In this document: positions 1 to 64,000 of the stretch, one piece after another
Position numbering within the stretch: the first letter of the stretch is position 1
How the letters are laid out: every line of letters starts with the position of its first letter
Assembly (NCBI RefSeq): GCF_039654945.1
Contig: NW_027361731.1
Coordinates: forward strand, 25,916,001 to 25,980,000
Source of the DNA: Dendrobates tinctorius
Lineage: Eukaryota
Direction of reading: 5' to 3'
DNA length: 64,000 nt
Notes under the pieces: model-generated
Told to the model about the DNA's origin: nothing
The model's database searches: none
Seen by the model: only the letters and a program-made list of their open reading frames with translations
Made by a program: the position numbers and the translations under genes

Positions 1-2361
1 TACAAGAATATAACTACTATAATACTGCCCCCTATGTACAAGAATATAACTAGTATAATACTGCCCCTATGTACAAGAATATAACTACTATAATACTGGT
101 CCCTATATACAAGAATATAACTGCTATAATACTGCCCCCTATGTACATGAATATAACTACTATAATACTTCTCCTATGTACAAGAATATAACTACTATAA
201 TACTGCCCCCTATGTACAAGAATATAACTACTATAATACCGCCCCTATGTACAAGAATATAACTACTATAATACTGCTCCTATGTACAGGAATATAACTA
301 CTATAATACTGCCCCCTATGTACAAGAATATAACTACTATAATACTGCTCCCTATGTACAAGAATATAACTACTATAATACTGCCCTTATGTACAAGAAT
401 ATAACTACTATAATACTGCTCCTATGTGCAAGAATATAACTACTATAATACTGCTCCTATGTACAGGAATATAACTACTATAATACTGCCCCCTATGTAC
501 AAGAATATAACTACTATAATACTGCCCCCTATGTACAAGAATATAACTACTATAATACTGCTCCCTATGTACAAGAATATAACTACTATAATACTGCCCC
601 TATGTACAAGAATATAACTACTATAATACTGCCCCTATGAACAAGAAAATAACTGCTATAATACTGCCCCTATGTACAAGAATATAACTACTATAATACT
701 GCCCCTATGTACAAGAATATAACTACTATAATACTGCTCCTATGTACAAGAATATAACTACTATAATACTGCTCCTATGTACAAGAATATAACTACTATA
801 ATACTGCCCCTATGTACAAGAATATAACTACTATAATACTGCTCCCTATGTACAAGAATATAACTACTATAATACTGCCCCTATGTACAAGAATATAAAT
901 ACTATAATACTGCCCCTATGTACAAGAATATAACTGCTATAATACTGCCCCTATGTACAAGAATATAACTGCTATAATACTGCCCCTATGTACAAGAATA
1001 TAACTACTATAATACTGCCCCCTATGTACAAGAATATAACTACTATAATACTGCTCCCTATGTACAAGAATATAACTACTATAATACTGCCCCTATGTAC
1101 AAGAATATAACTACTATAATACTTCCCCTATGTACAAGAATATAAATACTATAATACTGCCCCTATGTACAAGAATATAACTACTATAATACTGCCCCTA
1201 TGTACAAGAAAATAACTGCTATAATACTGCCCCTATGTACAAGAATATAACTACTATAATACTGCCCCTATGTACAAGAATATAACTACTATAATACTGC
1301 TCCTATGTACAAGAATATAACTACTATAATACTGCTCCTATGTACAAGAATATAACTACTATAATACTGCCCCTATGTACAAGAATATAACTACTATAAT
1401 ACTGCTCCCTATATACAAGAATATAACTGCTATAATACTGCCCCCTATGTACATGAATATAACTACTATAATACTTCTCCTATGTACAAGAATATAACTA
1501 CTATAATACTGCTCCCTATGTACAAGAATATAACTACTATAATGCTGCCCTTATGTACAAGAATATAACTACTATAATACTGCCCCCTATGTACAAGAAT
1601 ATAACTACTATAATACTGCCCCTATGTACAAGAATATAACTACTATAATACTGCTCCTATGTACAGGAATATAACTACTATAATACTGCCCCCTATGTAC
1701 AAGAATATAACTACTATAATACTGCCCCCTATGTACAAGAATATAACTACTATAATACTGCCCCCTATGTACAAGAATATAACTACTATAATACTGCCCC
1801 TATGTACAAGAATATAACTACTATAATACTGCCCCTATGTACAAGAATATAACTACTATAATACTGCCCCTATGTACAAGAATATAACTGCTATAATACT
1901 GCCCCTATGTACAAGAATATAACTACTATAATACTGCCCCTATGTACAAGAATATAACTACTATAATACTGCTCCCTATGTACAAGAATTTAACTACTAT
2001 AATACTGCCCCTATGTACAAGAATATAAATACTATAATACTGCCCCTATGTACAAGAATATAACTACTATAATACTGCCCCTATGTACAAGAATATAACT
2101 GCTATAATACTGCCCCTATGTACAAGAATATAACTACTATAATACTGCCCCCTATGTACAAGAATATAACTACTATAATACTGCTCCCTATGTACAAGAA
2201 TATAACTACTATAATACTGCCCCTATGTACAAGAATATAACTACTATAATACTGCCCCTATGTACAAGAATATAACTACTATAATACTGCCCCTATGTAC
2301 AAGAATATAACTACTATAATACTGCCCCTATGTACAAGAATATAACTACTATAATACTGCC
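1..2361 (+). repeat. 35-bp minisatellite array (TATGTACAAGAATATAACTACTATAATACTGCCCC), left part
   Basis: Directly visible head-to-tail units of 34-36 bp; runs off the window start. Confidence 0.98.
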
Positions 2362-2397
2362 TCCTAGCTGTGAGGTTGTGTGTCAGTGGTTCTCCTG

Positions 2398-5056
2398 ATG
2401 TCTGGAGCAAGCCCAGGGAGGGGCCACCCTGGGCAGGGAAGCTCCCCAAGCAAGGCCCAGGCTTCCAGGCCTACACTGGGAGGAAACTCCCATCCTTCTC
2501 ATGTGGATGGAAATCCCAGAGTTGCCTCTGCTGGAAATAAACCTCAGAATGGAAGTCCCAGCAGCATGGAGAAAGATCCTGTGTTGAAGTTCAGCACAGG
2601 AAAGAAACAAGAGAAAGCTTTGTCTGTGTGCAAGGATGTTTCTGTTAAACAGTCGGCCAGTCAAGGCAAACAGTGTCCAGAGCCTGGAAGGAAATCCCAG
2701 AAGGCATCTTCTGCTGAGAACCTGAGTGTTGGAGGGCAGGTGGCTGCACAGAAGGTGAGGCAGAGTCCATCACCAGCTTCAGGTGTGCAGCTCACTCCAG
2801 GCAGACAGAGACGGACATCTCTGGAGAAGCAAACACTCCAGGAGAACCTTCAGCTGGGACATGTGGTGACCAGCATGGCGAGCTCTGGACGCACGAGGTT
2901 GCAGGCTGGTGGCAGTGGTAAAAGTGTTGCGGAGGCTGGAGCCACAAAACCAGCGACATTAAAAACCAACGTGTCAACCCCTAAAGCAAGACCCCAGAAG
3001 GAGCCGCCGCGTGCCCCGGAGCTACAGCTGGCAGAGGAGATACCAGGACTGGTCAGGAGGATGGGTGAGTTGCAGCAGCAGAGGAATCTTCTGCAAATAG
3101 AAATTGACTGCATTTACAAGGTGAAGGCTGCAAATCCTGGGGATCACTCCGTATGTGACCAGAGACTGAACGCACTGGGGGTAGAGCTGGCGACTGTGGT
3201 GCGGGACATAGACTGTGTGCTGGCGAGGATGGGGCCCCTGGCAGAGACTTATAGGAACCAGGAGCGGTTTAGGTCCTGCACGCAGGACTCTGCTGGTTCC
3301 CGCACAGACATTGTCCCAGGTGGGACCCGGCAGCAGGTACGGCCGGTGCTGCAGCCCGCTAGCTTCTGTTTTAAGGAGGGTCAGATACTGCACCAGCAGC
3401 CGCAACTACCTGCGGCAGACCCCAAGCAGGAGCAAGAGGCTCAGATCCCAGCAGTACCACAAGTCCCAGCATGCCCAGCACAACAGCAAGACAGTGGACA
3501 TGAGACTGCATCTACTGTTGGTGTCCAGGAGAGCACTAATTCTGGGGATATTGGTACTGTTCATGTGGGGTTGGGGGCTGAAGGGGGTACAGAGACTGTG
3601 GTGGACATTGCGCATCCTGATGACACTATTGAGATTGATGATGATGATAATAATGTGCAAAATGTCTGTGATTTCCCCCCTTTGGTTTCCAGCACACAAG
3701 GTGCAACAGGCCCCTCCGCTGCAGACCCTCGCCCTGTCAGTCAGCCCAGTGTGGCCCCACAGGTCCCTCCCAGTAATGTTTGGGGCCGCGGCGCTCCATC
3801 CTTTACCTCCAGCGCCAATTACACCGGGCAGGCTTTCAAAAGGAGGAATGTGGTGCGGTTCAGGCACAGAGGTGCCAAGGAGGATCTGCCAGAGAGGAGG
3901 CTGGTGGTCAGGGAGCTTCTGTGCCGCCAGATGGGGTTTGCGCCGGTTAATATCTTGGCGGTCATCAATCTGCCAGACAGACAGGGCTATGATATCAGCT
4001 TTAAGCTTATGTCTGATCTGGACAGATTCTGGGCCAATTTCCCCAAGTTCAGGGACGCTGATGGCTGGAATAAGTTCAGCTTCATTCCAATATCTAAGCC
4101 GGATACCGCCACGGTTAACATCATCTTTTGGAATGAGGCTGTTCCCCCGCAGGACATTGTGGTGTGGCTCCGGAGGCATTGTGACCATGTCTCCGACCTC
4201 ACCAAAAACAGGGATGAGGACGGAAATGGACCGGTGGATGGAAGGTGCTGGTGAAATTGCGCCAGCACAACAATATCACGGCTCACTTACCCAACTCCTT
4301 CTTTATCGGGAGGGAGAAGGGGGTTTGCTTCTACCCTGGGCAGCCACGAAAGTGTTTTAAGTGTGGTAAAGTGGGTCACCTGGCAAACACCTGTACCGTG
4401 GTAAAGTGCAGCCTGTGCGGGGAAGTCGGCCACTTAGCGGCAGATTGCCAGAACATCAAGTGCAACCTCTGTGGGGAGGTCGGCCACCCTCACAGGGACT
4501 GTCCAGATGCCTGGCACAATATATGCAAGCTCCTTCCTGATGAGGAGTTAGTGACAGGGACAGAGGCTCAGGAGGAGGAGGCTTTAATGTCAGGGACAGT
4601 ACTGACCAGGTCAGAGGTCCACCAGGGGTCCGCTCAGGTAACATCTGAGCAGCTTTGTACAGAGGGGAGCATGGAGGTCGTCCCTCAGGTCCAGCAGCCA
4701 CATGTAGCCACCACTTCAGTATCACCATCTCTAGCTGAAGAAAGTGGCTGTAATCAGGTAAAAAGGAAAAAAAGGACAAGGCCTCCCGTAAACCTGAGGA
4801 GGAGTATGTCACTAGCCAGGGTGGCAGGAAAAAAGTCCAGAGTTCGGCAGGTGTGATGGTCGTGTCCAATAAGTTTGATGTTTTGTCTGAGTCTGATGGG
4901 GACTTGGAGGAAGAGATAAAAAGAATAGAGACTGAGTATGACAGGGACGTAGCGGACCATCCCCCTACAAAACGGAAGCCCGTACCTGCTGACACTGAGA
5001 TACAGTCTGACATGGAGACCGGTGGTAGTCAGAACATCTGTGACCCAGACTTATGA
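2398..5056 (+). pseudogene. Tx1 ORF1 (gag-like, ZCCHC3-type zinc-knuckle protein) with two apparent 1-bp frameshifts
   Basis: First ATG at 2398. Frame breaks at ~4225 (DEDG/WTGGWKVLVKL continues in the -1 frame) and in the A-run at ~4760-4773. Knuckles CFKCGKVGHLANTC, CSLCGEVGHLAADC, CNLCGEVGHPHRDC; ends ...SNKFDVLSES...CDPDL*. Confidence 0.85.
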
Positions 5057-8000
5057 TGGCGGCTTTTACATCTCTGCTCCTCTGTTGTGGTATTGTGATG
5101 GCGGATTTCTCATTAAAAATAACATCCAGTAATGTGAACAGCATTAAGGTGAGGAGGACGAGGCACGCTGTCTATGACCATCTCCGATACCTGGACGCAG
5201 ATGTCATCTTTCTGCAGGAGACGCGGCTGACGACTCAGGGGCTCATGAGGGAGGCTGAGAGGGAATGGCGGTCTGGTCCCTCTTTTTGGTCATTGGCTGT
5301 GGAGTCGTACGCCGGGGTCGCCATTCTGTTTAACACCAGGGATGTGACAGTACATAGGATGACGGAGGTGGTTATGGGAAGGTGTCTGGTCCTGAAAGTC
5401 ACTGTCCATGGGAGGCGACTCCGGCTTATTAACATCTATGGGCCACAGACGGTGACTGACAGGATACAGTTATTTAATGATGTCAAGCCTTATCTGTTCA
5501 CCTCTCTTCCAGTGATAATGGCGGGGGACTTTAATGCCATACTGACATCAGGTGACAGCTCCTCAGGTAGAACCGTGACGAGGGATGGTAGGATCTTGAA
5601 TAACATAGTCCTGCAGGCCGGATTAGGGGACGTCTTTAAACGGGGAGGTCGAAAGCCAAAATTAAACTATTCCTGCTCCAATAGAGGCAGTAGAATAGAT
5701 CTGGCTTTTGTAAGTCCCATGGAAGTCATTGGTGCCATGAGTGAGAGAGTCGTCCCATACTCAGACCATCTTGCCCTATATTTCTGCCTGGGGGCCACTA
5801 AGCGAGCTGATGTTGGTAGGGGGTTATGGAGACTGAATTCCAGCCTCCTCCATGATGTCTCTGTCCAGAGTTGTGTCCACTCCCTTTTGCAGGGTCATCT
5901 ACAAAGAGTGGACTTCTATGACGACATGGCCGACTGGTGGGAGGACATCAAGGATGATATCAGATACCTCTTGAAGAGACTGTCAGTTAAGAAGGGCAGG
6001 AGTAAGTATAGCCAGTACCTAAGGCTGCGCAAAGAATTGGAGTCACTCTATTCGGAGGGCGGGGGTAACAAAGAGAAGATCGACCGGTTGAAATCTGAGA
6101 TAAGGCAGTATCAGTACAGCAGGTATACCTCCTTGGTTCTTGAACGGGATTATGGGGTTTTGGGGGCACCTGATCCCTTTGAGAATTGCCGGGAGCGGGT
6201 GGCCAATAAATTGGTCACAGGTCTCATTGACTCCCAGGGTGTATTGCAGGAATCTCGGGAGGGTATCCTGGGGGTTGTGAAATCTTATTATACTGACTTG
6301 TTTCAGAGGAAGGCTTTGGATAAACATAAAATGACTCAGTTCTTGGAGGCAACTCCAGCGCCTGATACTAATGATCTGGACTTTTCTCCTTTGACAGCAG
6401 AATTAACGGTGGAGGAGGTTAAGGAGGCCATTGATAAGTTACATCTGAAGAAGGCACCAGGTCCGGATGGTATAACAGCAGAATGTTATAAGATATTCAG
6501 AGACCTCCTGGCTCCAATTCTTGTGGATGTTTACAAAAATTGTCTAGAAAATCACCTGATGCCTCCATCCATGAGAGTGTCCTCATTAATTCTGCTGTCT
6601 AAAGGTAAGGAGCCGAGCGACATCAAGAACTGGAGGCCAATTGCCCTCTTGAATGTTGACAGGAAGATTCTGGCGAAGATCTTGTTTTCTAGGTTAGTCT
6701 GTTTGTCCCCGGCACTGTTGGTAGGCTCTCAGTTTGGCACGGTAAAAGGGCGGAACATCTCTGGAGCGGTCATCTCGATACGGGAGATGTTTGAGAGATG
6801 TAAAGCTCTGCGGTGTGGGAGATATGTTGTCAGTCTGGACCAGGCTAAAGCCTTTGACAGAGTTGATCATGATTATCTGTGGGCCACTTTGTCAAAGTAC
6901 GGTATTCCAGGACAATTTGTGGATTGGCTGAAGACTTTGTACAGAGAGGCGGTGAGCTTTCCTCTGATTAATGGTTGGCAGGGTGGCACTTTTGGAGTTG
7001 AGGCGGGGGTGAGACAGGGCTGCCCGCTGAGTCCACTCCTGTATGTTTTTGCCATAAACCCGTTTCTGAGGTCACTGCAGGAGTGTAACTTTTGGGGGGT
7101 GCCGGTCCCCCACTGCTTGCCTCTGAAGGTGGTTGCCTACGCGGATGATGTGACACTGGTGATATCTAATCCTCATGAGGTGCAGATGTTGTCTGCGGCC
7201 ATCAGAAGTTACTCAGAGGCCTCCGGGTCTCTGGTCAACCTTGAGAAGAGTCAAGCTCTGTGGACATTGCAATCTGACCCAGACTTTGATCTGCCGCAGT
7301 TTGTTAAGGCCTCCACCCATATTAAGATCTTAGGGGTTAAATTTGGGAGGGAAGATAATGCCAGCCTAAATTGGGAGGAAAAATTGGAGACCGGAAATGC
7401 AAAGGTTCAGCGATGGAAGAACTGGAGGCTGACTTACAGAGAAAGGGTTGCTATGTTGAAGACGTACCTGGTCCCCGTCTTCTTGTATGTCTCTGTCGTT
7501 TTTCCTTTGCCAGAATCCTTCTCGGCGAGGCTCCTCAGCCTGTTCTTCCAGCTCTTGTGGGGGAACAGGATGAACCTGATAAAGGGGGGAATAACGTACC
7601 TACGGCGGAGTGAGGGCGGGCTGGATATGTTAAATCCAAGGGTTTTCTTTGACTCCTTGTTTCTGAAAGTAAATTTTGGGAGCATGGATTCAAACAGTAG
7701 CTCCCTGTGGGCGAATAGTATCAGGTATTGGATATTGCCTTTTGCGGAATCTTGGGTGCGAGGCGGCAGTCTCAAGAGGAGGAGATGGACAGGTGACCAC
7801 CTCCCCCAGTATCTGGAATATGGTCTGAAGTGTGTTAGGAAGTGGGGACTGGAGAAGTCCTACATTGAGAGTAATACGAGGAAAGATCTGTGTGCTCATA
7901 TATGTAGGACTTTCTTCTACTCTCCACTGGCCCTAAGAGATTGTGCCACCAGGACCCTTCAGGACAGTCTCCGGTTCCTCAACGGGAGGCGACTTCCAGC

Positions 8001-8460
8001 AAAGTTTTTTGACATTGCTTGGCTGTCGCTACATGGGAAGCTCTTTGTGAGGGGGAACTTAAAATATTTAAGTGTTTTGGATCGGAACTGTCCCCTTGGT
8101 TGTCAGCAGGAGGAAACCATGGAGCATTTTATTTGTGATTGCTGGGGAGGTAGGGAAATATGGACGGAAGTATCGACCAAGCTGAAAATCCCCAGACTGC
8201 TGTCCCTGAAATACCCTGACATTATCTATGGAGTCCCATCCACTGACGGTAACATCGACAGGGGGACAATGTACCTGATCATTACCACCATTAAGTATCA
8301 CCACTGGCACATGAGAACCCGAGTGTCCCTCCACAGCGAGCCCTTCCATCCCGTCACCGCAGCCACAAAGATACTGTCCGAGCTCAGATGGATAAGAGCG
8401 ATAGAGATAAAGAAAAGTCAGAGTAATGAGAGACTATGGAGGAATGTGTCTGTGGGATAA
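5053..8460 (+). CDS. Tx1 ORF2: apurinic-like endonuclease + reverse transcriptase, 1135 aa, uninterrupted
   Basis: APE motifs NVNS, LQET, GDFN, RID, SDH; RT motifs KAPGPDG, WRPIALLN, DQAKAFDRV, GVRQGCPLSP, YADD, ILGV; C-terminal CPLGC..ETMEHFICDC. Confidence 0.96.
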   Translation: MMAAFTSLLLCCGIVMADFSLKITSSNVNSIKVRRTRHAVYDHLRYLDADVIFLQETRLTTQGLMREAEREWRSGPSFWSLAVESYAGVAILFNTRDVTVHRMTEVVMGRCLVLKVTVHGRRLRLINIYGPQTVTDRIQLFNDVKPYLFTSLPVIMAGDFNAILTSGDSSSGRTVTRDGRILNNIVLQAGLGDVFKRGGRKPKLNYSCSNRGSRIDLAFVSPMEVIGAMSERVVPYSDHLALYFCLGATKRADVGRGLWRLNSSLLHDVSVQSCVHSLLQGHLQRVDFYDDMADWWEDIKDDIRYLLKRLSVKKGRSKYSQYLRLRKELESLYSEGGGNKEKIDRLKSEIRQYQYSRYTSLVLERDYGVLGAPDPFENCRERVANKLVTGLIDSQGVLQESREGILGVVKSYYTDLFQRKALDKHKMTQFLEATPAPDTNDLDFSPLTAELTVEEVKEAIDKLHLKKAPGPDGITAECYKIFRDLLAPILVDVYKNCLENHLMPPSMRVSSLILLSKGKEPSDIKNWRPIALLNVDRKILAKILFSRLVCLSPALLVGSQFGTVKGRNISGAVISIREMFERCKALRCGRYVVSLDQAKAFDRVDHDYLWATLSKYGIPGQFVDWLKTLYREAVSFPLINGWQGGTFGVEAGVRQGCPLSPLLYVFAINPFLRSLQECNFWGVPVPHCLPLKVVAYADDVTLVISNPHEVQMLSAAIRSYSEASGSLVNLEKSQALWTLQSDPDFDLPQFVKASTHIKILGVKFGREDNASLNWEEKLETGNAKVQRWKNWRLTYRERVAMLKTYLVPVFLYVSVVFPLPESFSARLLSLFFQLLWGNRMNLIKGGITYLRRSEGGLDMLNPRVFFDSLFLKVNFGSMDSNSSSLWANSIRYWILPFAESWVRGGSLKRRRWTGDHLPQYLEYGLKCVRKWGLEKSYIESNTRKDLCAHICRTFFYSPLALRDCATRTLQDSLRFLNGRRLPAKFFDIAWLSLHGKLFVRGNLKYLSVLDRNCPLGCQQEETMEHFICDCWGGREIWTEVSTKLKIPRLLSLKYPDIIYGVPSTDGNIDRGTMYLIITTIKYHHWHMRTRVSLHSEPFHPVTAATKILSELRWIRAIEIKKSQSNERLWRNVSVG

Positions 8461-8656
8461 TAACATGATCGTGTTACTAAAAGTGTTTATTTCATATTCT
8501 TCCTTCCACAGGAGTGAACTCTAAGTTACCTTTATTCCTAATGTATTAATTTAGTTCTGTAATTATTGTCTGATGCATTCATGAGAATTTATGTTTTGTA
8601 TTAAGGAAGAATTCTGTTTATTTTAATTGTATTTGTTGGATTTATACAATAAAAAT

Positions 8657-11329
8657 TGCCCCTATGTACAGGAATATAACTACTATAATACTGCTCCTAT
8701 GTACAAGAATATAACTACTATAATACTGCTCCCTATGTACAAGAATATAACTACTATAATACTGCTCCCTATGTACAAGAATATAACTACTATAATACTG
8801 CCCCCAATGTACAAGAATATAACTACTATAATACTGCCCCCTATGTACAAGAATATAACTACTATAATACTGCTCCTATGTACAGAATATAACTACTATA
8901 ATACTGCCCCTATGTACAAGAATATAACTATTATAATACTGCCCCTATGTACAAGAATATAACTACTATAATACTGCCCCTATGTACAAGAATATAACTA
9001 CTATAATACTGCTCCTATGTACAAGAATACAACTACTATAATACTGCTCCTATGTACAAGAATATAACTACTATAATACTGCCCCCTATGTACAAGAATA
9101 TAACTACTATAATACTGCCCCCTATGTACAAGAATATAACTACTATAATACTGCCCCTATGTACAAGAATATAACTACTATAATACTGCCCCTATGTACA
9201 AGAATATAACTACTATAATACTGCCCCTATACAAGAATATAACTACTATAATACTGCCCCCTATGTACAAGAATATAACTACTATAATACTGCCCCTATG
9301 TACAAGAATATAACTACTATAATACTGCCCCTATGTACAAGAATATAACTACTATAATACTGCCCCTATACAAGAATATAACTACTATAATACTGCCCCT
9401 ATGTACAAGAATATAACTACTATAATACTGCCCCTATGTACAAGAATATAACTACTATAATACTGCCCCTATGTACAAGAATATAACTATTATAATACTG
9501 CCCCTATGTACAAGAATATAACTACTATAATACTGCCCCTATGTACAAGAATATAACTACTATAATACTGCTCCTATGTACAAGAATACAACTACTATAA
9601 TACTGCTCCTATGTACTAGAATACAACTACTATAATACTGCCCCTATGTACAAGAATATAACTACTATAATACTGCCCCTATACAAGAATATAACTACTA
9701 TAATACTGCCCCTATGTACAAGAATATAACTACTATAATACTGCCCCTATGTACAAGAATATAACTACTATAATACTGCCCCTATGTACAAGAATATAAC
9801 TACTATAATACTGGTCCCTATATACAAGAATATAACTGCTATAATACTGCCCCCTATGTACATGAATATAACTACTATAATACTTCTCCTATGTACAAGA
9901 ATATAACTACTATAATACTGCCCCCTATGTACAAGAATATAACTACTATAATACTGCTCCTATGTACAAGAATATAACTACTATAATACTGCCCCTATGT
10001 ACAAGAATATAACTACTATAATACTGCCCCTATGTACAAGAATATAACTACTATAATACTGCCCCTATGTACAAGAATATAACTACTATAATACTGCCCC
10101 TATACAAGAATATAACTACTATAATACTGCCCCTATGTACAAGAATATAACTACTATAATACTGCTCCTATGTACAAGAATATAACTACTATAATACTGC
10201 CCCTATGTACAAGAATATAACTACTATAATACTGCTCCTATGTACAAGAATATAACTACTATAATACTGCCCCCTATGTACAAGAATATAACTACTATAA
10301 TACTGCCCCCTATGTACAAGAATATAACTACTATAATACTGCCTCTATGTACAAGAATATAACTACTATAATACTGCCCCCTATATACAAGAATATAACT
10401 ACTATAATACTGCCCCTATGTACAAGAATATAACTATTATAATATTGCCCCCTATGTACAAGAATATAACTACTATAATACTGCTCCCTATGTACAAGAA
10501 TATAACTACTATAATACTGCCCCTATGTACAAGAATATAACTACTATAATACTGCCCCTATGTACAAGAATATAACTACTATAATACTGCTCCTATGTAC
10601 AAGAATATAACTACTATAATACTGCCCCCTATGTACAAGAATATAACTACTATAATACTGCCCCCTATGTACAAGAATATAACTACTATAATACTGCCTC
10701 TATGTACAAGAATATAACTACTATAATACTGCCCCCTATATACAAGAATATAACTACTATAATACTGCCCCTATGTACAAGAATATAACTATTATAATAT
10801 TGCCCCCTATGTACAAGAATATAACTACTATAATACTGCCCCTATACAAGAATATAACTACTATAATACTACTCCTATGTACAAGAATATAACTACTATA
10901 ATACTGCCCCCTATGTACAAGAATATAACTACTATAATACTGCTCCTATGTACAAGAATATAACTACTATAATACTGCCCCCTATGTACAAGAATATAAC
11001 TACTATAATACTGCCCCCTATGTACAAGAATATAACTACTATAATACTGCCTCTATGTACAAGAATATAACTACTATAATACTGCCCCCTATATACAAGA
11101 ATATAACTACTATAATACTGCCCCTATGTACAAGAATATAACTATTATAATATTGCCCCCTATGTACAAGAATATAACTACTATAATACTGCCCCTATAC
11201 AAGAATATAACTACTATAATACTACTCCTATGTACAAGAATATAACTACTATAATACTGCCCCCTATGTACAAGAATTTAACTACTATAATACTGCTCCT
11301 ATGTACAAGAATATAACTACTATAATACT
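8657..11329 (+). repeat. 35-bp minisatellite array, right part
   Basis: Same unit and orientation as 1-2361. Confidence 0.98.
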
Positions 11330-12740
11330 CACATTAATAATAATGTTATCTAGATAATTATTTACACGAGTTGATCAGAATGAGAATGAAAAAGTGATAT
11401 ATTATTTTTTTAAATATGTTTTTAATTCTTATGTCGTGATAGAAAAATAATTGAATCATATTCCCTCCGGTCTTTTGCTCTGGGGTTTTTGAGGGTCACA
11501 AAACCCAAGTTGAGCCTTTTGTTTTTGGGTTAATTGCAGGAATGAGCACATTCACAAGTCTTGACAGTTCATGATTTCTCCCTACATAACCAGATAATAG
11601 TAGTTTTCCTACAATAATCTCCTTTTTCTACAATGATCAGTGTATTTGGGTCTCAGCTACTGATTTTTACCCAGCACAGAGAGCAGCGTGAAGGGTCTCC
11701 ATGAAGGTGACGGGAAGGTGTGCGGGTGGCTGATGGGTGACCGTGAAGGTGTGCGGGTGGCTGATGGGTGTGCGGGTGGCTGATGGGTGACGGTGAAGGT
11801 GTGCGGGTGGCTGATGGGTGACTGTGAAGGCGTGCGGGTGGCTGATGGGCTCACACAGCTCATAGAAAGACAGCTGCCCGGCCTCATAGTCTACATAAAT
11901 CCTTATTCTCTGGCTGAGAACCTGATGCTGGTGGAGCATGGTCAGCTCCTGATTTTCCATCGCATAGTAATGATATTCGAGTCTGCGTAGGCACCAAGAC
12001 TTATTGCTACAACCCCTCTCCTGTAGGCCCCTCTCCGATCAATACTGGGGTACGTCATACCAACTCTCCAGGTCCCCTTTATACTGCTCTGTATTTCCCA
12101 GTCATGTGTGAACCCTGTCATTACTTATAACCTGGGAATTCTCAAATCTCCTTGGTGTCTGGACACGAGGTAGAGTCTTGTCTGAACTGAAGGCCATTTT
12201 TAGGTCTTGTGAAATGTCGATGTTGTTTCCAGCTGTTTCCACATCTAAATGAACCCAAAAAGTCCACCAATACTGCAATGGCACTTCCTTAACAATGTAC
12301 ATAAACCAAGAAGACAGTGTTTAGACTGACTCCTAATGAAGAGAACCATAAATGGATAACAAATAATTTTATTTAGCCTATTAAAATACATAAAATGCTA
12401 CCTGTATTCATTACAAACAAACATACCCCAGGGGAATAGCACAATACAGGATCACAAAAACCTCAAAAAAATGTTGGTAAAGTTCCCTTGAGCATACAAT
12501 ATATAAAATGGAATAATGAACAGGTCAATTTACATATAGACAGAGGGCCCAAAAAATCTTATTATCACTTGCCAACGGCATTAAATTACTAAAGTGCCCT
12601 TTTGTCCTATAGTTGACCATATGTAATAAAGTTATACCGCAATAAAATATATTGCAAATCGCATAAATGCCAATGATTTAAGAGAGGTGTACTTACTAAA
12701 GGGAAAAGAGGTGATTGTAGCCCGCAGTGATAACCCCGCG

Positions 12741-12777
12741 CCCCGACGCGCGTTTCGCCCGCTTGCTTCACCGGGGG
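12741..12777 (-). ncRNA. Second hammerhead-like motif in the opposite arm
   Basis: Minus strand CCCCCGGTGAAGCAAGCGGGCGAAACGCGCGTCGGGG; palindromic ACGCGCGT helix III; core box has a 1-nt deletion relative to the other arm. Confidence 0.45.
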
Positions 12778-12815
12778 CCCCCGGAAGAAGCAAGCGGGCG
12801 AAACGTGCGTCGGGG
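12778..12815 (+). ncRNA. Minimal type-I hammerhead-ribozyme-like motif (Penelope type)
   Basis: CCCC-CGGAAGA-A-GC..GC-GAAAC-GTGC-GTC-GGGG: helix I CCCC/GGGG, core box differing from CUGANGA at position 4, GAAA box, GUC triplet. Confidence 0.55.
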
Positions 12816-13345
12816 CGCAGGGTTATCACTGCGGGCTGCAATCACCTCTTTTCCCTTTAGTAAGTACACCTCTCTTAAATCATTGGCATTTATGCGATTT
12901 GCAATATATTTTATTGCGGTATAACTTTATTACATATGGTCAACTATAGGACAAAAGGGCACTTTAGTAATTTAATGCCGTTGGCAAGTGATAATAAGAT
13001 TTTTTGGGCCCTCTGTCTATATGTAAATTGACCTGTTCATTATTCCATTTTATATATTGTATGCTCAAGGGAACTTTACCAACATTTTTTTGAGGTTTTT
13101 GTGATCCTGTATTGTGCTATTCCCCTGGGGTATGTTTGTTTGTAATGAATACAGGTAGCATTTTATGTATTTTAATAGGCTAAATAAAATTATTTGTTAT
13201 CCATTTATGGTTCTCTTCATTAGGAGTCAGTCTAAACACTGTCTTCTTGGTTTATGTTTCCACATCTAGAAGAATATGAGAAGTTTTCTCTCCTCATGTG
13301 TCACCCATCATGAGTGTCTGGTTATGAGTTAGGGTCATGTCAGAC

Positions 13346-14277
13346 CTACCTCGCCTCAGTCTACCACAACCTTACCTGTGCCCTCCACAGCTCAGCACCA
13401 CCCTACATCTCCTCCCTCGCCTCAGTCTATCACCCTTCCTGTGCCCTCCACAGCTCAGCACCACCCTACATCTCCTCCCTCGCCTCAGTCTATCACCCTT
13501 CCCGTGCTCTCCACAGCTCAGCACCACTCTACATCTCTTCCCTCATCTCAGTCTACCACCCTACCCGTGCCCTCAGTTCTGCTGATGACATGAGATTAAC
13601 ATCCTCAATAATCAGAACCCTACCTGTGCCCTCCACAGTTCAGCACCATCCTACAGCTCCTCCCTCTCCTCAATCTACCACCCTTCCCATCCTCTCCGCA
13701 GTTCAGCACCACCCTACATCTCCTCCCTCGTCTCAGTTTACCACCCTACCCGCGCCCTCCGTTCTGCTAATGACCTGAGGTTAACATCCTCATTAATCAG
13801 AACCTCTCACTCCCATCTCAAAGATTTCTCACGTGCTGCGCCAATTCATTGGAATGCACTACCCAGGATAATTCGATTAACCCCCAATACTCACAATTTT
13901 AAGTGTGCCCTAAAAATCCATTTCTTCAGACTGGCCTACCACCTCAACACATTTATCTATCCTTGTGTTGCCCATTCAATATTTTTGACCATAACTAGGT
14001 TCCTTGTATCATGTTCTCTAACCGGTTCATGCAGCATTACATGAACACCCGATTTCCTGCATTATGGGCTGGTAAGCAAATGTTACCATCCACCTTTCGT
14101 GTCTCCCCTTTTCCGCATAGATAGTAAGCTTGCGAGCAGGGCCCTCATTCCTCTTGGTATCTGTTGCTTTATGTGTTTATTGTAATGCTGTAATGTCTAT
14201 TGTCTGTAGAAGTCCTCTCTATAATGTAAAGTGCTGCGGAATATGTTGGCGCTATGGAAATAAAATTATCATTATTA
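13346..14277 (+). mobile_element. L2-clade LINE 3' fragment with local ~60-bp tandem duplications
   Basis: Degenerate C-terminal LINE ORF2-like text (SAPPYISSLISVYHPTRAL...) followed by a 3' end GTAAAGTGCTGCGGAATATGTTGGCGCTAT..AATAAAATTATCATTATT resembling amphibian L2. Confidence 0.7.
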
Positions 14278-15389: not shown

Positions 15390-18300
15390 CCATGTGTGAG
15401 AGGTGCATTTTGGTGGAAAGTTTATTAACCTTTCAGGTGCTTCACAGGAATTTTTTGAATGTTTAAAAAAAATGAACATTTAACTTTTTTTCACCCAAAA
15501 AATACTTCAGGTTCAATTTTTTTATTTTACCATGGGTAAGAGGAGAAATTGGACTGCAAAAGTTATTGTGCAATTTGTCCTGAGTACGCTGATACCTGAT
15601 ATGTGGGGGGGGGGAACCACTGTTTTGGCGCATGGCAGACCTCAGAAGGGAAGGAGCGCCGTTTGACTTTTTCACTGCAAAATTGGCTGGAATTCAGATC
15701 GGATGCCATGTCAAGTTTGTAGAGCCCCTGATGTACCTAAACAGTGGAAACCCCCCACAAGTGACCCCATTTTGGAAACTAGACCCCCCAAGGAACTTAT
15801 CTAGATGTGTGGTGAGAACTTTGAACCCCCAGGGGCTTCACAGAAGTTTATAACGTGCAGCCGTACAATTAAAAAATCATATTTTTTCCACAAAAATTAT
15901 CTTTTCACCCCCAATTGTTGTTTTCCCAAGAGTAACAGGACCCCAAAAGTTATTGTGCAACTTGTCCTGAGTACGCTGATACCCCATGTGTGGGTGTAAA
16001 TGACTATTTGGGCGCATAGCAGAGCTCGGAAGGGAAGCAGCGCCATTTGACTTTTTTGGCTGGAATTGAGATCGGACGCCATGTCACGTTTGGAAAGCCC
16101 CTGATGTGCCAAAACAGTGGAAACCCCCAATTCTAACTCCAACCCTAACCCCAACACACCCCTAACCCTAATCTCAGCCCTAACCCTAGCCCTAACCCTA
16201 ACCCTAGCCCTAGAATCATAGAATCGTAAAGTTGGAAGGAACCTCCTGGGCCATCTGGTCCAACCCCCTGCTCAAAGCAGGATTCGCTAAATCATCCCAG
16301 TCAGATGTCTGTCCAGCCTCTGTTTGAAGACATCCATTGAAGGAGAACTCACCACTTCTCGTGGCAGCTTGTTCCACTCATTGATCACTCTAACTGTCAA
16401 AAAGTTTTTTCTAATATCTAATCTGTGTCTCCTCCCATTCAGCTTCATCCCATTGCTTCTAGTCTTTCCTTGTGCAAATGAGAATAAAGTTGATCCTTCT
16501 ACAATGTGACAGCCCTTTAGATATTTGTAGACAGCTATTAAGTCTCCTCTCAGTCTTCTCTTTTGCAAACTAAACATTCCCAAATCCTGCAACCTTTCCT
16601 CATAAGACAGGGTTTGCAGACCGGTCACCATTCTGGTCGCTCTTTTCTGAACTTGCTCCAGTTTGTTGATGTCTTTTTTAAAATGTGGTGCCCAAAACTG
16701 GACACAATATTCCAGATGAGGTCTGACCAAAGAGGAGTAGAGGGAAATAATGACTTCACGTGATCTAGACTGTATGCTTCTGTTAATACATCCTAGAATT
16801 GCATTTGCTTTTTTTGCTGCTGCATCACACTGTTGACTCATATTCAGTCTGTGATCTATTAGTATACCCAAGTCTTTTTCACATGTGCTGTCACTTAGCA
16901 CTATTCCTCCCATTCTATATATGCTTTTTCCATTTTTATTGCCCAGATGTAGTACTTTGCATTTCTCCCTGTTAAAAACCATTCTGTTAGTTGCTGCCCA
17001 CTTCTCCAGTTTATTTAAATCTTTTTGAATCCTCTCTCTCTCTTCTCTAGTATTAGCTATCCCTCCTAGCTTTGTGTCATCAGCAAATTTAATCAGTTTA
17101 CCCTCAATTCCTTCATCTAAATCGTTGATAAAGATGTTGAACAATACAGGGCCCAGGACAGAGCCCTGTGGTACCCCACTTGAGACATTCTTCCAACTGG
17201 ATGTGCAGCCATTTACGACCACTCTTTGGGTCCGATCACTAAGCCAGTTATGAATCCACCTAACAGTTGCCTTGTCCATTCCATACTCCCTAACCCTAGC
17301 CCTAATGGGAAAATGGAAATAAATACATTTTTTTTATTTTATTATTTTTCCCTAACTAAGGGGGTGATAACGGGGGGTTTGATTTACTATTCATGGCGAT
17401 TTTTATGTTTGGCAGCTGTTGCACGCTAAAAGATGCTTTTTATTGTAAAAATAGTTTTTGCATCACCACATATTGAGAGCTATAATTTTTCCATATTTTG
17501 ACCCACCGAGTCATGTGAGGTCTTATTTTTTGCGGGACGAGTTGACGTTTTTATTGGTATCATGTTCGGGCACGTGACATCTTTTGATCGCTTTTTATTC
17601 CGATTTTTGGGACGCAGAATGAACAAAAACCAGCGTTTCATGAATTTCTTTTGGGGGGTTGCGTTTACACCGTTCCGCGTGCGGTAAAATTGATAAAGCG
17701 GTTTTATTCTTCGGGTCAGTACAGTTACAGCGATACCTCATTTAGGTCTTTTTTTTATGTTTTGGCGCTTTTATGCAACGAAAACAATTTTGTATAAAAA
17801 ATAATTATTTTTGCATCACTTTATTCTGCGAGCTATAACTCTTTATTTTTTCGCTGATGATGCTGTATGGTGGCTCGCTTTTTGCGGGACAAGATGATGT
17901 TTTCAGCGGTACCATGGATATTTATATGCGTCTTTTTGATCGCGCGTTATTACACTTTTTGTTCGGCGGTCTGATGATAAAGTTTTATTTTTTGCTTCGT
18001 TTTTTATTTTTATTTTTTAAAGGGTTCAATAAAGGGGTTAACTAGTGTGACAGTTTTATAGGTCGGGTCGTTACGGACGCGGCGATACCAAATATGTGTA
18101 CTTTTGTTGTTTTTTTTATTTTCAAAAAATGAATTTATTAGGGAATTTTTTTTTTTTTTTTATTTACCGATTTTTTTTTTTATAAATTATTTTTACACTT
18201 TTTTTTTTTTTTTACTTCATTACAATGTCCCAGGTGGGACATCACTGTCACGTGACAGATCGCTGATCTGTCACATCACAGATCGCTGTGACAGATCAGC

Positions 18301-22136: not shown

Positions 22137-22980
22137 CGTGTGCGCGGCGTGTGTGTGAGTGCGGCGTGTGTGTGTGTGTGGCGTGTGTGTGAGTGCGGCG
22201 TGTGTGTGTGTGGCATGTGTCCAGCCATGTTTTTTGTGTGTGAGTGCGGTGTGTGTGTGGCGTGTGTGTGAGTGTGGCGTGTGTGTGGTGTGTGTGAGGT
22301 GTGTGTGTGTGGCGTGTGTGTGAGTGTGGCGTGTGTGTGAGTGTGGCGTGTGTGTGAGTGTGGCGTGTGTGTGAGTGCGGCGTGTGTGTGAGTGCGGCGT
22401 GTGTGTGAGTGCGGCGTGTGTGTGAGTGCGGTGTGTGTGTGAGTGTGGCGTGTGTGGCGTGTGTGTGAGTGTGGCGTGTGTGTGAGTGCGGCGTGTGTGT
22501 GAGTGCGGCGTGTGTGTGAGTGCGGCGTGTGTGTGAGTGCGGCGTGTGTGTGAGTGCGGCGTGTGTGTGAGTGCGGCGTGTGTGGCGTGTGTGTGAGTGT
22601 GGCATGTGTCCAGCCATGTTTTTTGTGTATGAGTGCGGTGTGTGTGTGGCGTGTGTGTGAGTGCAGCGTGTGTGTGAGTGTGGCGTGTGTCCAGCCATGT
22701 TTTTTGTGTGTGAGTGCGGCATGTGTGTGAGTGCGGCGTGTGTGTGAGTGCGGTGTGTGTGTGAGTGTGGCGTGTGTGGCGTGTGTGTGAGTGTGGCATG
22801 TGTCCAGCCATGTTTTTTGTGTATGAGTGCGGTGTGTGTGTGGCGTGTGTGTGAGTGCGGCGTGTGTGTGAGTGTGGCGTGTGTCCAGCCATGTTTTTTG
22901 TGTGTGAGTGCGGCGTGTGTGTGAGTGCGGCGTGTGTGTGAGTGCGGCGTGTGTGTGAGTGCGGCGTGTGTCCAGCCATG
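22137..22980. repeat. GT-rich compound minisatellite (GTGTGTGTGAGTGCGGC-like, ~17 bp) inside the Harbinger element
   Basis: Directly visible; source of the His/Thr-rich spurious ORFs. Confidence 0.95.
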
Positions 22981-39050: not shown

Positions 39051-39341
39051 GGTGAATTTAAGGACCATAAAGAGGATCAATAAAGAGCAAACAACGTCTC
39101 ACCAAAGGAGGCGCCACTACAAATCCCAGCAACTTCGCATTATGGGATCAGCAGTCAGTTATATGCAATCAATATAGGGTATATCCACAAACTCTAGAAA
39201 ACCCTGGCCCATAAAAAGTCTCCTAAATGCTGCAGAGCCTAGTGCGCTTATCAGTGAAAGAGAGAAGCTTAAATGCAGCCAAGGAATAAATATGATGAAT
39301 GGATAACTACCTGAGGGTCAAAGAAGTGGTGGGGCTCCCCA

Positions 39342-45239: not shown

Positions 45240-45765
45240 ATACTGTGTGGGCGCGCTACTGCCGATACTGTGTGCGTGCTTACTGCCAGTACTGTGTGGG
45301 CGCACTACTGCTGGTACTATGGCCGGTACTGTGTGGGCGCGCTACTGCCGGTACTGTGTGGGCGCGCTACTGCCGGTACTGTGAGGGCGCGCTACTGCCG
45401 GTACTGTGTGGGCACGCTACTGCCGGTACTGTGTGGGCACGCTACTGCCGGTACTGTGTGGGCGCGCTACTGCCGGTACTGTGTGGGCGCGCTACTGCCG
45501 GTACTATGGCCGGTATTGTGTGCGTGCTACTGCCGGTACTGTGTGGGCACGCTACTGCCAGTACTGTGTGGGCGCACTACTGCTGGTACTGTGTATGCTA
45601 CTGCCAGTACTGTGCGGGCGCACTACTGCTGGTACTGTGTGCATGCTACTGCCGGTACTGTGCGGGCGCGCTACTGCTGGTACTGTGTGCATGCTACTGC
45701 CGGTACTGTGCGGGCGCGCTACTGCTGGTACTGTGTGCATGCTACTGCCGGTACTATCACTACTG
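45240..45765. repeat. 25-bp GC-rich minisatellite (GTACTGTGTGGGCGCGCTACTGCCG)
   Basis: Directly visible. Confidence 0.95.
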
Positions 45766-46329: not shown

Positions 46330-46359
46330 CTGCAAAACAGCACAAATATTACACACAGG

Positions 46360-47150
46360 AGGCAGTATTATAGTAGTTATATTCTTGTACATGGGAGCAG
46401 TATTATAGTAGTTATATTCTTGTACATAGGGCAGTATTATAGTAGTTATATTCTTGTACATGGGAGCAGTATTATAGTAGTTATATTCTTGTACATAGGG
46501 GACAGTATTATAGTAGTTATATTCTTGTACATGGGAGCAGTATTATAGTAGTTATATTCTTGTACATAGGGCAGTATTATAGTAGTTATATTCTTGTACA
46601 TAGGGAGCAGTATTATAGTAGTTATATTCTTGTACATAAGAGCAGTATTATAGTAGTTATATTCTTGTACATAAGAGCAGTATTATAGTAGTTATATTCT
46701 TGTACATAAGAGCAGTATTATAGTAGTTATATTCTTGTACATAGGAAGCAGTATTATAGTAGTTATATTCTTGTACATAGGGGGCAGTATTATAGTAGTT
46801 ATATTCTTGTACATAGGGGGCAGTATTATAGTAGTTATATTCTTGTACATAGGGGGCAGTATTATAGTAGTTATATTCTTGTACATAGGAGCAGTATTAT
46901 AGTAGTTATATTCCTGTACATAGGGGCAGTATTATAGTAGTTATATTCCTGTATATAGGGAGCAGTATTATAGTAGTTATATTCTTGTACATAGGGGGCA
47001 GTATTATGGTAGGGATATTCTTGCACTTATTAGTGGCATTACATATGATAGTAGTTATATTCTGGTACATAGTGGTAGTATTACATATTATGGTGGTTAT
47101 ATTCTTGCACATAGTGGTAGTATTACATATTACAGTAGTGATATACAGCT
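46360..47150 (-). repeat. 35-bp minisatellite (same family as 1-11329, opposite orientation) filling TMEM220 intron 5
   Basis: Directly visible; degenerate after ~47020. Confidence 0.95.
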
Positions 47151-48372: not shown

Positions 48373-48442
48373 CTGTAAAACACAGAAGAAAAATGTGAAA
48401 AAAACTGCCAACACCATTATATCCTCATCAGCACTGCATAAA

Positions 48443-63660: not shown

Positions 63661-64000
63661 AGGGGGCAGTATTATAGTAGTTATATTCTTGTACATAGGG
63701 GGTAGTATTATAGTGGTTATATTCTTGTACATAGGAGCAGTATTATAGTAGTTATATTCTTACACATAGGAGCAGTATTATAGTAGTTATATTCTTGTAA
63801 ATAGGAGTAGTATTATAGTAGTTATATTCCTGTACATAGGGGCAGTATTATAGTAGTTATATTCTTGTACATAGGAGCAGTATTATAGTAGTTATATTCT
63901 TGTACATAGGGGGCAGTATTATAGTAGTTATATTCTTGTACATAGGAGTAGTATTATAGTAGTTATATTCTTGTACATAGGAGTAGTATTATAGTAGTTA
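63661..64000 (-). repeat. 35-bp minisatellite (same family as 1-11329), runs off the window end
   Basis: Directly visible. Confidence 0.96.

What the first reader, a model, noticed from the sequence alone, without database searches (positions are those of the whole stretch)
2340..8680. Candidate minisatellite-targeting Tx1 retrotransposon
Seen: a full-length two-ORF element sits inside a 35-bp minisatellite array with both junctions at the same register of the unit (..ATAATACTGCC|element..CAATAAAAAT|TGCCCCTATG). At least TGCC is duplicated, or about 9 bp if TGCCTCCTA is read as a variant unit. Known: Tx1-clade elements are often sequence-specific (Tx1L/Tx2L into Xenopus DNA transposons, Keno into U2 snRNA, Mutsu into 5S rDNA, Kibi/Koshi into microsatellites). 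Inference: this family may target the dispersed frog 35-bp minisatellite, which occurs at three loci in this window alone, using it as a large safe-harbour target. I know of no description of that target, but one insertion cannot prove specificity.
Basis: partly seen in the sequence, partly recalled or inferred. Interest (0 to 1): 0.8.

Follow-up and report, generated by a model that had tools for sequence, protein, structure and literature searches.

The report
Retrotransposon that targets a frog minisatellite
A 6.3-kb jumping gene of the L1/Tx1 type sits at one exact base of a 35-bp tandem repeat, and a diverged, independently inserted relative in the common toad sits at the same base, so this family very probably uses the repeat as a safe landing site.

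Summary
A non-LTR retrotransposon (window 2362-8656, + strand) splits one 35-bp minisatellite array (1-2361 and 8657-11329) cleanly between ...ATAATAC and TGCC..., with TGCC duplicated.

One correction: ORF2 (1135 aa: APE endonuclease, RT, zinc-binding tail) is open, but ORF1 is broken into three reading frames.

- A full-length relative in Bufo bufo (locus L009) has 79% ORF2 amino-acid identity and both ORFs open.
- It lies in the same 35-bp repeat, in the same orientation, at the same nucleotide.
- The two loci share no other sequence.
- The two ORF2s differ by dS 0.85 with dN/dS 0.15, so two long-separated active lineages inserted independently at one site.
- Assembled contigs from four sequencing studies show the family is multi-copy. 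Two contigs run from the 3' UTR into the repeat.
- A more distant relative in Pelobates cultripes shows identical junctions at six 3' ends on four chromosomes, in a different repeat.

I could not count copies genome-wide. I had no named Tx1 sequence, so Tx1 clade membership rests on architecture.

Kojima 2015 already lists satellites among Tx1 targets, so this is a new member of a known kind. First-reader notes (unchecked) report similar Tx1-in-satellite cases elsewhere in this genome.

The parts
1..2361 (+). Upstream part of the 35-bp minisatellite array that is the target. The unit, written from the insertion site, is TGCCCCTATGTACAAGAATATAACTACTATAATAC.
   Evidence: TRF; pattern scan; sequence.
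2358..2361 (+). 5' copy of the duplicated target bases TGCC.
   Evidence: The same four bases begin the 3' flank at 8657-8660. The Bufo bufo copy has TGCC at both junctions too.
2362..8656 (+). The retrotransposon (6295 bp). It has no poly(A) tail. It starts at TCCTAGCTGTGAGG, or at 2367 if TGCCTCCTA is read as a target copy.
   Evidence: The 5' end aligns with the Bufo bufo copy from the junction onward.
2362..2397 (+). Very short 5' UTR (31-36 nt). An in-frame TGA lies at 2371-2373. The ORF1 ATG is at 2398 and is conserved in L009.
2398..4251 (+). ORF1 segment a: a long low-complexity N-terminal part, the first ZCCHC3-type RNA-binding domain, and the first half of the second one. The frame breaks at about 4218-4251.
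   Evidence: Pfam PF23057 (E 5.6e-22) and PF23058 profile positions 1-35; frames. Contigs of other copies differ in length at 4223/4225.
4218..4853 (+). ORF1 segment b, in another frame: the second half of the second RNA-binding domain and three CCHC zinc knuckles. A second frame change lies at about 4754-4853.
   Evidence: PF23058 profile positions 44-72 and zf-CCHC (E 5e-15); frames. Contigs differ in length at 4766/4767.
4754..5056 (+). ORF1 segment c, in a third frame: the acidic C-terminal tail. Its TGA stop overlaps the ORF2 start (ATGA at 5053-5056).
   Evidence: The same ATGA overlap joins the two open ORFs of L009.
5053..8460 (+). ORF2, open, 1135 aa.
   Evidence: Residues 21-916 align with LINE-1 ORF2 protein structures at E 8e-79.
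5125..5769 (+). APE-type endonuclease domain (ORF2 residues 25-239), the presumed reader of the target. The catalytic motifs are present: SNVN, QET, GDFN, RID, SDH.
   Evidence: PF03372 at E 3.7e-14; alignment to L1 endonuclease structures; translation.
6622..7344 (+). Reverse transcriptase domain (ORF2 residues 524-764).
   Evidence: PF00078 at E 7.8e-37.
7987..8163 (+). C-terminal zinc-binding region (zf-RVT, ORF2 residues 979-1037).
   Evidence: PF13966 at E 5.3e-5, below the gathering score. The same match occurs in L009.
8461..8656 (+). 3' UTR (196 nt). Only the last ~17 nt (TTTATACAATAAAAAT, 8641-8656) are conserved with the Bufo bufo copy. AATAAA lies at 8648-8653, three bases before the end of the element.
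8657..8660 (+). 3' copy of the duplicated target bases TGCC.
8657..11329 (+). Downstream part of the same 35-bp array.
46353..47083 (-). Second array of the same unit, uninterrupted (unoccupied targets).
63666..64000 (-). Third array of the same unit. It runs off the window and is uninterrupted as far as it can be seen.

Best explanation
The element is a young but disabled copy (ORF1 frame-broken) of an L1-superfamily, Tx1-type LINE family. The family inserts sequence-specifically into the 35-bp minisatellite, between ...ATAATAC and TGCC....

Proposed mechanism (inferred except where marked):
1. The ORF2 APE endonuclease recognises the unit and nicks the bottom strand at 5'-...GGGGCA^GTATTAT-3'.
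2. The freed 3' end primes reverse transcription of the element RNA (target-primed reverse transcription).
3. The AAUAAA signal lies only 3 nt from the element's end (shown). Transcripts are therefore probably cleaved inside the next repeat unit and carry a few target bases.
4. Those bases can pair with the nicked strand. This would fix the register and explain why integrated copies have no poly(A) tail (shown).
5. A top-strand nick 4 nt downstream gives the TGCC duplication (shown).

The repeat offers a very large number of harmless sites, which makes it a safe harbour.
For: Anatomy:
- APE, RT and zinc-binding tail in an open 1135-aa ORF2; ORF1 with two RNA-binding domains and three CCHC knuckles.

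Junctions:
- Clean insertion with TGCC duplicated and no poly(A).

Independent second insertion:
- Bufo bufo L009 holds a full-length relative with both ORFs open.
- It is in the same satellite, on the same strand, at the same nucleotide.
- The loci share no flank or gene.
- ORF2 identity is 79% aa, dS 0.85, dN/dS 0.15.
- The 3' UTRs are unalignable except the terminal ~17 nt.

Multi-copy evidence:
- Near-identical contigs occur in runs from four studies.
- Junction-bridging contigs: X5 record 14 (8233-8690) and X9 record 29 (7984-8677).
- One X5 contig with a diverged 3' UTR joins at 8623.
- No listed loose end diverges at 8656.
- 5'-junction words are held by 22 runs of 10 studies, but this rests on only 2 sampled words.

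Control:
- Another truncated LINE in the L009 array sits at a different register with a ~16-bp duplication.

Relatives:
- The Pelobates family shows six identical 3' junctions...AAATAAAAT(A) followed by (ACTG)TCTCCCC, a 12-bp duplication, and a head-to-tail pair.

Background: Tx1-clade elements are typically target-specific (PMC4494074).
Against: - Only two full insertions of this lineage were read base by base. No genome-wide count of flanks was possible.
- Logan contigs drop rare variants, so copies with other flanks could exist unseen. The junction contigs could partly reflect amplification of element plus array.
- The window copy itself cannot be autonomous, because ORF1 is broken.
- The two TSD-side sequences differ if more than TGCC is counted.
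- A related degenerate copy in another frog (L002) has an A-run tail and a non-satellite flank.
- No biochemical evidence for the nick site.
- Tx1 clade membership was not tested against labelled sequences.
Confidence: 0.8

Rival explanations
1. Chance insertion. A LINE without sequence specificity happened to land in a very abundant satellite.
For: - The satellite is extremely abundant. It makes up 9.5% of this window, and its summed contig depth is thousands of times that of the element.
- Another unrelated LINE fragment also lies in the satellite in L009.
- 'Same register at both junctions' is automatic for any clean insertion.
Against: - An independently sampled, 21% diverged relative sits at the same nucleotide and strand in Bufo bufo. 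That is 1/70 even if both are granted to be in the satellite.
- Contigs bridge the junction in low-coverage runs.
- There is no poly(A) tail, and the 3' terminus is conserved.
- The relatives in Pelobates are site-specific.
Confidence: 0.06
2. One old insertion was multiplied passively. Element and flanking repeat were copied together by unequal crossing-over or segmental duplication, or inherited by both species. The shared junction would then reflect descent, not targeting.
For: - Satellite arrays expand by unequal exchange.
- The array shows large internal duplications: the same pair of variant units recurs at 103-171, 1409-1477 and 9818-9886.
- Part of the multi-copy junction signal in contigs could arise this way.
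Against: - The window and L009 ORF2s differ at dS 0.85 but dN/dS is 0.15 and both are fully open. Dead passengers would decay neutrally.
- The 3' UTRs have diverged beyond alignment while the junction is kept.
- The flanking unit variants differ.
- No synteny was found.
Confidence: 0.09
3. Regional rather than sequence targeting. The element is tethered to satellite heterochromatin by a chromatin or protein factor and inserts anywhere within it.
For: - Many first-reader notes in this genome place Tx1-like elements in several different satellites. These notes are unchecked.
Against: - Tethering would not give single-nucleotide and strand precision in two diverged lineages, nor in six Pelobates 3' junctions.
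Confidence: 0.03

Closest known systems
Tx1L of Xenopus laevis (Tx1 clade), which inserts at one site in the internal repeats of the DNA transposon Tx1D
   Same: - Frog LINE with an APE-type endonuclease and RT.
- Precise insertion at one sequence inside repeated DNA.
- For Tx1L the endonuclease has been shown to nick its target specifically (as cited in PMC1950540 and PMC4494074).
   Different: - The target here is a free-standing 35-bp minisatellite, not a site inside a DNA transposon.
- Sequence relationship to Tx1L was not measured, because no labelled Tx1L sequence was available.
- No biochemistry has been done here.
Kibi and Koshi (Tx1 clade, teleosts) and the crocodilian Tx1 families in (TTCC)n/(TTTC)n
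   Same: Tx1-type elements that use simple tandem repeats as abundant, harmless targets (PMC4494074).
   Different: Those targets are 2-4-bp microsatellites, where the register is nearly meaningless. Here a 35-bp unit is read at one defined base and in one orientation.
Tx1 families with 'Sat' (satellite) targets in Fig. 3 of Kojima 2015 (PMC4494074)
   Same: The same class of target, a satellite, is already recorded for the clade.
   Different: The text does not name the families or satellites, and the supplements are not held. I cannot tell whether any is this bufonid 35-bp repeat.
Pelobates cultripes relatives found here (L003, L004, L007, L008)
   Same: - Same ORF1/ORF2 architecture; 42% ORF2 identity.
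- 3' end ...AATAAAAT without poly(A).
- Identical junctions at every copy.
- Target lies in a 42-48-bp repeat.
- A head-to-tail pair is present.
   Different: - Different target (ACTGTCTCCCC...), with a 12-bp duplication.
- The flanks are conserved over more than 100 bp, so the target may be a dispersed composite repeat rather than a plain array.
R1 and R2 elements of arthropod rDNA
   Same: - The safe-harbour strategy.
- Precise junctions.
- Downstream target sequence in read-through transcripts helps set the register. This is my own knowledge of R1Bm and R2 work; I did not check it in a paper here.
   Different: - R2 uses a restriction-like endonuclease.
- R1 belongs to another APE clade.
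- Both target rRNA genes.

Membership tests
Tx1 clade of the L1 superfamily (non-LTR retrotransposons) | ORF2 has an N-terminal APE-type endonuclease followed by RT, with no restriction-like endonuclease and no RNase H. | tested here: met
   PF03372 at residues 25-239 and PF00078 at 524-764; no other catalytic domain. The catalytic motifs align with L1 endonuclease structures.
Tx1 clade of the L1 superfamily (non-LTR retrotransposons) | ORF2 is nearest to the L1 group among solved or known LINE proteins. | tested here: met
   LINE-1 ORF2 protein matches at E 8e-79 over residues 21-916. R2 proteins match only in the RT core, at E 1e-17 to 6e-21.
Tx1 clade of the L1 superfamily (non-LTR retrotransposons) | ORF1 has RNA-binding domain(s) followed by CCHC zinc knuckles, not the vertebrate L1 ORF1 type. 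| tested here: met
   PF23057, PF23058 and zf-CCHC match; no L1 ORF1 family matches. That this architecture marks Tx1 is my own knowledge.
Tx1 clade of the L1 superfamily (non-LTR retrotransposons) | The RT groups with named Tx1 elements (Tx1L, Keno, Kibi, Koshi, Mutsu) in a phylogeny. | not testable with these tools
   No hit carried a clade name. The Tx1L papers are not held. The nearest hits are unnamed Xenopus tropicalis RT proteins, at 52-56% over the whole protein and 70% in the RT.
Tx1 clade of the L1 superfamily (non-LTR retrotransposons) | Insertion at a specific target sequence. | tested here: met
   Two independent insertions at the same base and strand; bridging contigs. The sample is small and there was no genome-wide census.
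L1 clade in the strict sense (mammalian-type LINE-1) | L1-type ORF1, poly(A) tail, and loose TTTT/AA target with variable duplications. | tested here: not met
   ORF1 is of the ZCCHC3/CCHC type. The element ends in AATAAAAAT directly on the target. The junction is identical in L009.
R2-like site-specific elements (restriction-like endonuclease) | Single ORF with a C-terminal PD-(D/E)xK endonuclease and N-terminal DNA-binding motifs. | tested here: not met
   Two ORFs and an N-terminal APE domain. Similarity to R2 is confined to the RT.

The most novel reading that the evidence does not exclude
Frogs may carry a radiation of Tx1-type families, each specialised on its own minisatellite.

- First-reader notes in this genome alone list such elements in repeats of 35, 36, 40, 61/62 and 81/86 bp.
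- A separate repeat is targeted in Pelobates.
- The endonuclease would read a core that can be retargeted over evolutionary time.
- The 35-bp unit and one Pelobates target share CCCCTWTGTACA next to the insertion site.

If this holds, it would be a natural series of APE-type LINEs with long, defined, shifting target sites. It would also mean an arms-length co-evolution of satellites and their resident LINEs.
Probability: 0.35. Interest if true: 0.7.

Novelty: new member of a known kind. Interest (0 to 1): 0.5.

Why it matters
- Site-specific LINEs with APE-type endonucleases are few. Each new pairing of endonuclease and long target helps to work out how an APE fold reads sequence. That question also matters for attempts to steer LINE-based gene insertion.
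- Here the target is a defined 35-bp unit, and the site has been kept across two lineages separated by dS 0.85. The Bufo bufo copy has both ORFs open, so the nicking specificity can be tested directly with a short duplex.
- For genome biology, it shows that part of the LINE load of toad genomes is stored inside satellite arrays. It also shows that gene models there can be contaminated by these elements: a Bufo bufo 'UVS.2-like' model starts inside ORF2.

Tried and rejected
- A megablast of the element against the phage collection was pointless and blank.
- The exact window ORF2 is not on record in the contig collection.
- A search with the last 200 aa of ORF2 gave a single hit. Its 995-bp contig L002, from another frog, is a degenerate relative with an A-run tail and a non-satellite flank. 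It is too distant and decayed to bear on this family.
- L001 (80% RT identity) and L006 are contigs without element ends.
- Two metagenome scans, for the 3' terminus and for the conserved 5' junction, were blank. This was expected, since frogs are not in that collection.
- The search of earlier findings by sequence was blank.
- The Bufo gargarizans model P0056 spans too long a range for its DNA to be returned.
- The Ranitomeya model P0019 is not on record.
- The Xenopus laevis locus L005 holds a relative interrupted by 8.7 kb. Its 5' end lies in an assembly gap, which I left alone, and its 3' end is ambiguous. No conclusion was drawn from it.
- Attempts to obtain a labelled Tx1 sequence or the Tx1L target failed. 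The papers are not held, and cluster names and Atlas names are uninformative.
- The idea that the satellite derives from the element's ends was rejected. The termini share nothing with the unit beyond TGCC/TCCT, and arrays exist without the element.
Full report
THE OBSERVATION

The window begins inside a 35-bp minisatellite. Tandem Repeats Finder reports 66.9 copies at 1-2366 and 76 copies at 8657-11329. Shorter arrays of the same unit lie on the other strand at 46353-47083 and 63666-64000. A 33-nt unit pattern with up to 3 mismatches matches 166 times against none expected.

Between the two halves lies 6.3 kb of GC-richer DNA.
- 5': ...ACTATAATACTGCC|TCCTAGCTGTGAGG...
- 3': ...TTTATACAATAAAAAT|TGCCCCTATGTACAGG...

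TGCC is present on both sides (2358-2361 and 8657-8660). Removing 2362-8656 and one TGCC restores a perfect unit.

A caution: any clean insertion with a short duplication has both junctions in the same register. This feature on its own says nothing about targeting.

ANATOMY

ORF2 (5053-8460, 1135 aa) is open. It has three recognisable parts:
- an endonuclease/exonuclease/phosphatase domain at residues 25-239;
- RVT_1 at residues 524-764;
- a weak zf-RVT match at residues 979-1037.

Residues 21-916 align with solved LINE-1 ORF2 proteins at E 8e-79. R2 proteins match only in the RT core. The endonuclease motifs (N of SNVN, E of QET, GDFN, RID, SDH) are in place.

ORF1 is of the type that Pfam models on ZCCHC3: two RNA-binding domains and three CCHC knuckles. 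Here it lies in three frames, 2398-4251, 4218-4853 and 4754-5056.
- The first break cuts the second RNA-binding domain in two. Profile positions 1-35 are in one frame and 44-72 in the next.
- Contigs of other copies differ in length at both places (4223/4225 and 4766/4767). The window copy is therefore the deviant one.

The ORF1 stop overlaps the ORF2 start (ATGA at 5053-5056). The 5' UTR is only 31-36 nt. The 196-nt 3' UTR ends in AATAAAAAT directly on the target, with no poly(A) tail.

OTHER COPIES IN THE SAME SPECIES

The window holds no second copy. Twelve sequencing runs from four studies of one organism hold the 3' UTR. All are kept as Logan contigs.

Laid on 2740-8730, near-identical contigs cover the element in all four runs:
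- 0 differences in 331 nt;
- 2 differences in 208 nt;
- 4 differences in 653 nt.

Their word depths are roughly flat along the element within each run. The family is therefore multi-copy and the window copy is young.

Evidence at the 3' junction:
- Two contigs run from the 3' UTR across 8656/8657 into the repeat. X5 record 14 covers 8233-8690, 34 nt into the repeat. X9 record 29 covers 7984-8677, 21 nt into it.
- One X5 contig with a different 3' UTR joins the window sequence at 8623.
- Among the listed loose ends, none leaves the element at 8656 for a different flank.

X5 is a very small data set (8 million letters of contigs) in which only repeated sequence assembles. The junction itself is therefore very probably multi-copy. 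However, contigs drop rare variants and the table is truncated, so this is not a census.

Words spanning the 5' junction (2337-2396) are held by 22 runs of 10 studies and several coded organisms. This rests on only two sampled words and I could not lay those runs.

AN INDEPENDENT INSERTION IN BUFO BUFO

A Bufo bufo gene model (P0017, 'UVS.2-like') matched 80 residues of ORF2 at 75%. I fetched its locus without any knowledge of its flanks (L009). It contains:
- a full-length relative at about 4994-11604, with ORF2 79% identical over 1134 aa and nucleotide identity about 80%;
- both ORFs open: ORF1 of 987 aa with the complete domain set, and ORF2 of 1132 aa, joined by the same ATGA overlap.

The relative lies inside the same 35-bp minisatellite (arrays at 1-2080, 3338-4993 and 11605-14163). 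It is on the same strand and at the same nucleotide:
- 5': ...ACTATAATACTGCCTCCT|TGCTGAGAGGTTGTGTGTCAGG
- 3': ...TTTTATACCAATAAAAAT|TGCCTCCTATGTAC

Outside element and satellite the two loci share nothing detectable. The astacin/CUB exons that follow in L009 are absent from the window.

More decisive is the coding comparison. The two ORF2s differ by dS 0.85 but dN/dS is 0.15. A single old insertion inherited or duplicated as dead DNA would have decayed neutrally. Instead, both lineages evolved under selection as active elements and each inserted at this site.

The 3' UTRs are almost unalignable except for the last ~17 nt, TTTATAC(C)AATAAAAAT. This points to a constrained 3' terminus.

Granting that both copies are in the satellite, the same register and strand has probability 1/70. 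Without that grant the probability is lower by the satellite's genome share.

As a contrast, L009 2077-3337 is an unrelated 5'-truncated LINE in the same array. It sits at a different register with a ~16-bp duplication. That is what a non-specific hit looks like.

MORE DISTANT RELATIVES

Pelobates cultripes proteins with 51-52% RT identity led to four loci on four chromosomes.
- Their elements have 42% ORF2 identity and the same ORF1 type.
- They end at ...AAATAAAATAAAAT|ACTGTCTCCCC... in L003 (twice), L004 and L007. L008 has a near-identical form, twice.
- The 12-nt ACTGTCTCCCCT is repeated at the 5' side.
- L003 holds two copies head to tail, sharing that 12-mer.
- The target lies in 42-48-bp repeats. 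The flanks are conserved for more than 100 nt, so it may be a dispersed composite repeat.

Strict site choice in repeated DNA is therefore a property of this frog lineage, not of one locus.

THE 5' BOUNDARY

The octamer TGCCTCCT at the window's 5' junction is not among the variants of the host array. It occurs in 0 of about 122 units; the commonest variants are TGCCCCT (55), TGCCCCCT (27) and TGCTCCT (19). The Bufo bufo copy has the same octamer.

The simplest reading is that TCCT is the first four bases of the element and the duplication is TGCC. The alternative is that a few bases of the donor's upstream unit travel with the RNA. I cannot decide between them.

MECHANISM

Shown:
- the domains;
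- the junctions;
- the 4-nt duplication;
- the lack of poly(A);
- the AATAAA signal three bases from the end;
- the conserved terminus;
- recurrence of the site.

Inferred:
- The APE domain nicks the bottom strand at GGGGCA^GTATTAT, and reverse transcription is primed there.
- Transcripts end in the downstream unit and pair with the nicked strand, which sets the register. This follows what I know of R1 and R2 work, which I did not check in a paper here.
- The top strand is cut 4 nt further on.

The promoter is unexplained, given a 5' UTR of about 35 nt.

COMPARISON WITH WHAT IS KNOWN

Tx1-clade elements are known for target preference (PMC4494074):
- Tx1 inserts into the transposon Tx1D.
- Keno inserts into U2 snRNA genes.
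- Kibi and Koshi insert into (TC)n and (TTC)n.
- Crocodilian families insert into Mariner-type elements, LTR elements, Harbinger elements and (TTCC)n/(TTTC)n.

The legend of that paper's Fig. 3 lists 'Sat, satellites' among known targets. The Tx1L endonuclease nicks its site specifically (as described in PMC1950540). Full-text searches found no paper on Tx1 elements in frog minisatellites.

Membership in the L1 superfamily was tested and met. Membership in the Tx1 clade rests on ORF1 architecture, the Xenopus neighbours and the targeting behaviour. No labelled Tx1 sequence was available for a tree.

EARLIER NOTES OF THIS SCAN

First readers reported Tx1-like elements in satellites of 35, 36, 40, 61/62 and 81/86 bp on other pieces of this genome. 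One of these lies in the 35-bp repeat 469 kb upstream of this window. All are unchecked and I could not read their DNA. I used them as leads only. They motivate the 'radiation' reading given in the section on the most novel reading.

VERDICT

This is a new member of a known kind. Interest is moderate.

Noticed in passing
window 11706-64000: The window is a mosaic of many unrelated minisatellite arrays:
- 17 bp at 22144-22971
- 27 bp at 27256-28593
- 27/28 bp at 30396-32162
- 53-55 bp at 36380-39051
- 14 bp at 43432-44220
- 25/50 bp at 45236-45755
- 40 bp at 47888-48104
- 83 bp at 48440-53420
- 34 bp at 54403-59884 (161 copies)
- 43 bp at 62816-63133

None carries a copy of this element.
   Followed up: partly
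window 16950-17315 (-): A weak reverse-transcriptase match to ORF2 residues 606-736 (24% identity, E 2.7e-4). It is probably a fragment of an unrelated LINE.
   Followed up: no
window 103-171, 1409-1477, 9818-9886: The same pair of variant units (CTATATAC...CTGC followed by ...CATGAATA...CTTC) recurs three times, on both sides of the element. The array therefore contains large internal duplications.
   Followed up: no
L009 2077-3337 (Bufo bufo): A different, 5'-truncated LINE with a CWRC...HC zinc motif lies in the same 35-bp array. It sits at another register with a ~16-bp duplication, AAGAATATAACTWCTA. It serves as a useful contrast to the targeted element.
   Followed up: partly
L009 8001-8939 (Bufo bufo): The annotated 'embryonic protein UVS.2-like' model (P0017) takes its first ~150 residues from ORF2 of the retrotransposon. 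It then joins astacin/CUB exons 24 kb downstream. This is probably an annotation chimera.
   Followed up: partly
L003 3958-21250; L004, L007, L008 (Pelobates cultripes): A related family is inserted at ACTGTCTCCCC(T) in 42-48-bp repeats.
- L003 holds two copies head to tail, sharing the 12-nt target.
- In L008 the 3' end region occurs twice, 1274 bp apart.
- The flanks are conserved over more than 100 nt between chromosomes.
   Followed up: partly
window 8657-8675 versus L003 21238-21260: The two targets share CCCCTWTGTACA just downstream of the insertion site. Seven of 5000 shuffles reach the score for L003; the similarity is weaker for L004 and L007. This could be a conserved recognition core, or chance.
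   Followed up: partly
window 8641-8656 and L009 11588-11604: The last ~17 nt of the 3' UTR are conserved between the two subfamilies, while the rest of the UTR has diverged beyond alignment. The Pelobates elements, and perhaps the X. laevis one, also end in ATAAAAT.
   Followed up: partly
L005 9580-18282 (Xenopus laevis): A relative of the element is split by an 8.7-kb insertion that holds 70-bp and 186-bp tandem arrays. 28-bp and 31-bp minisatellites follow 0.2-1.3 kb after its 3' end.
   Followed up: no
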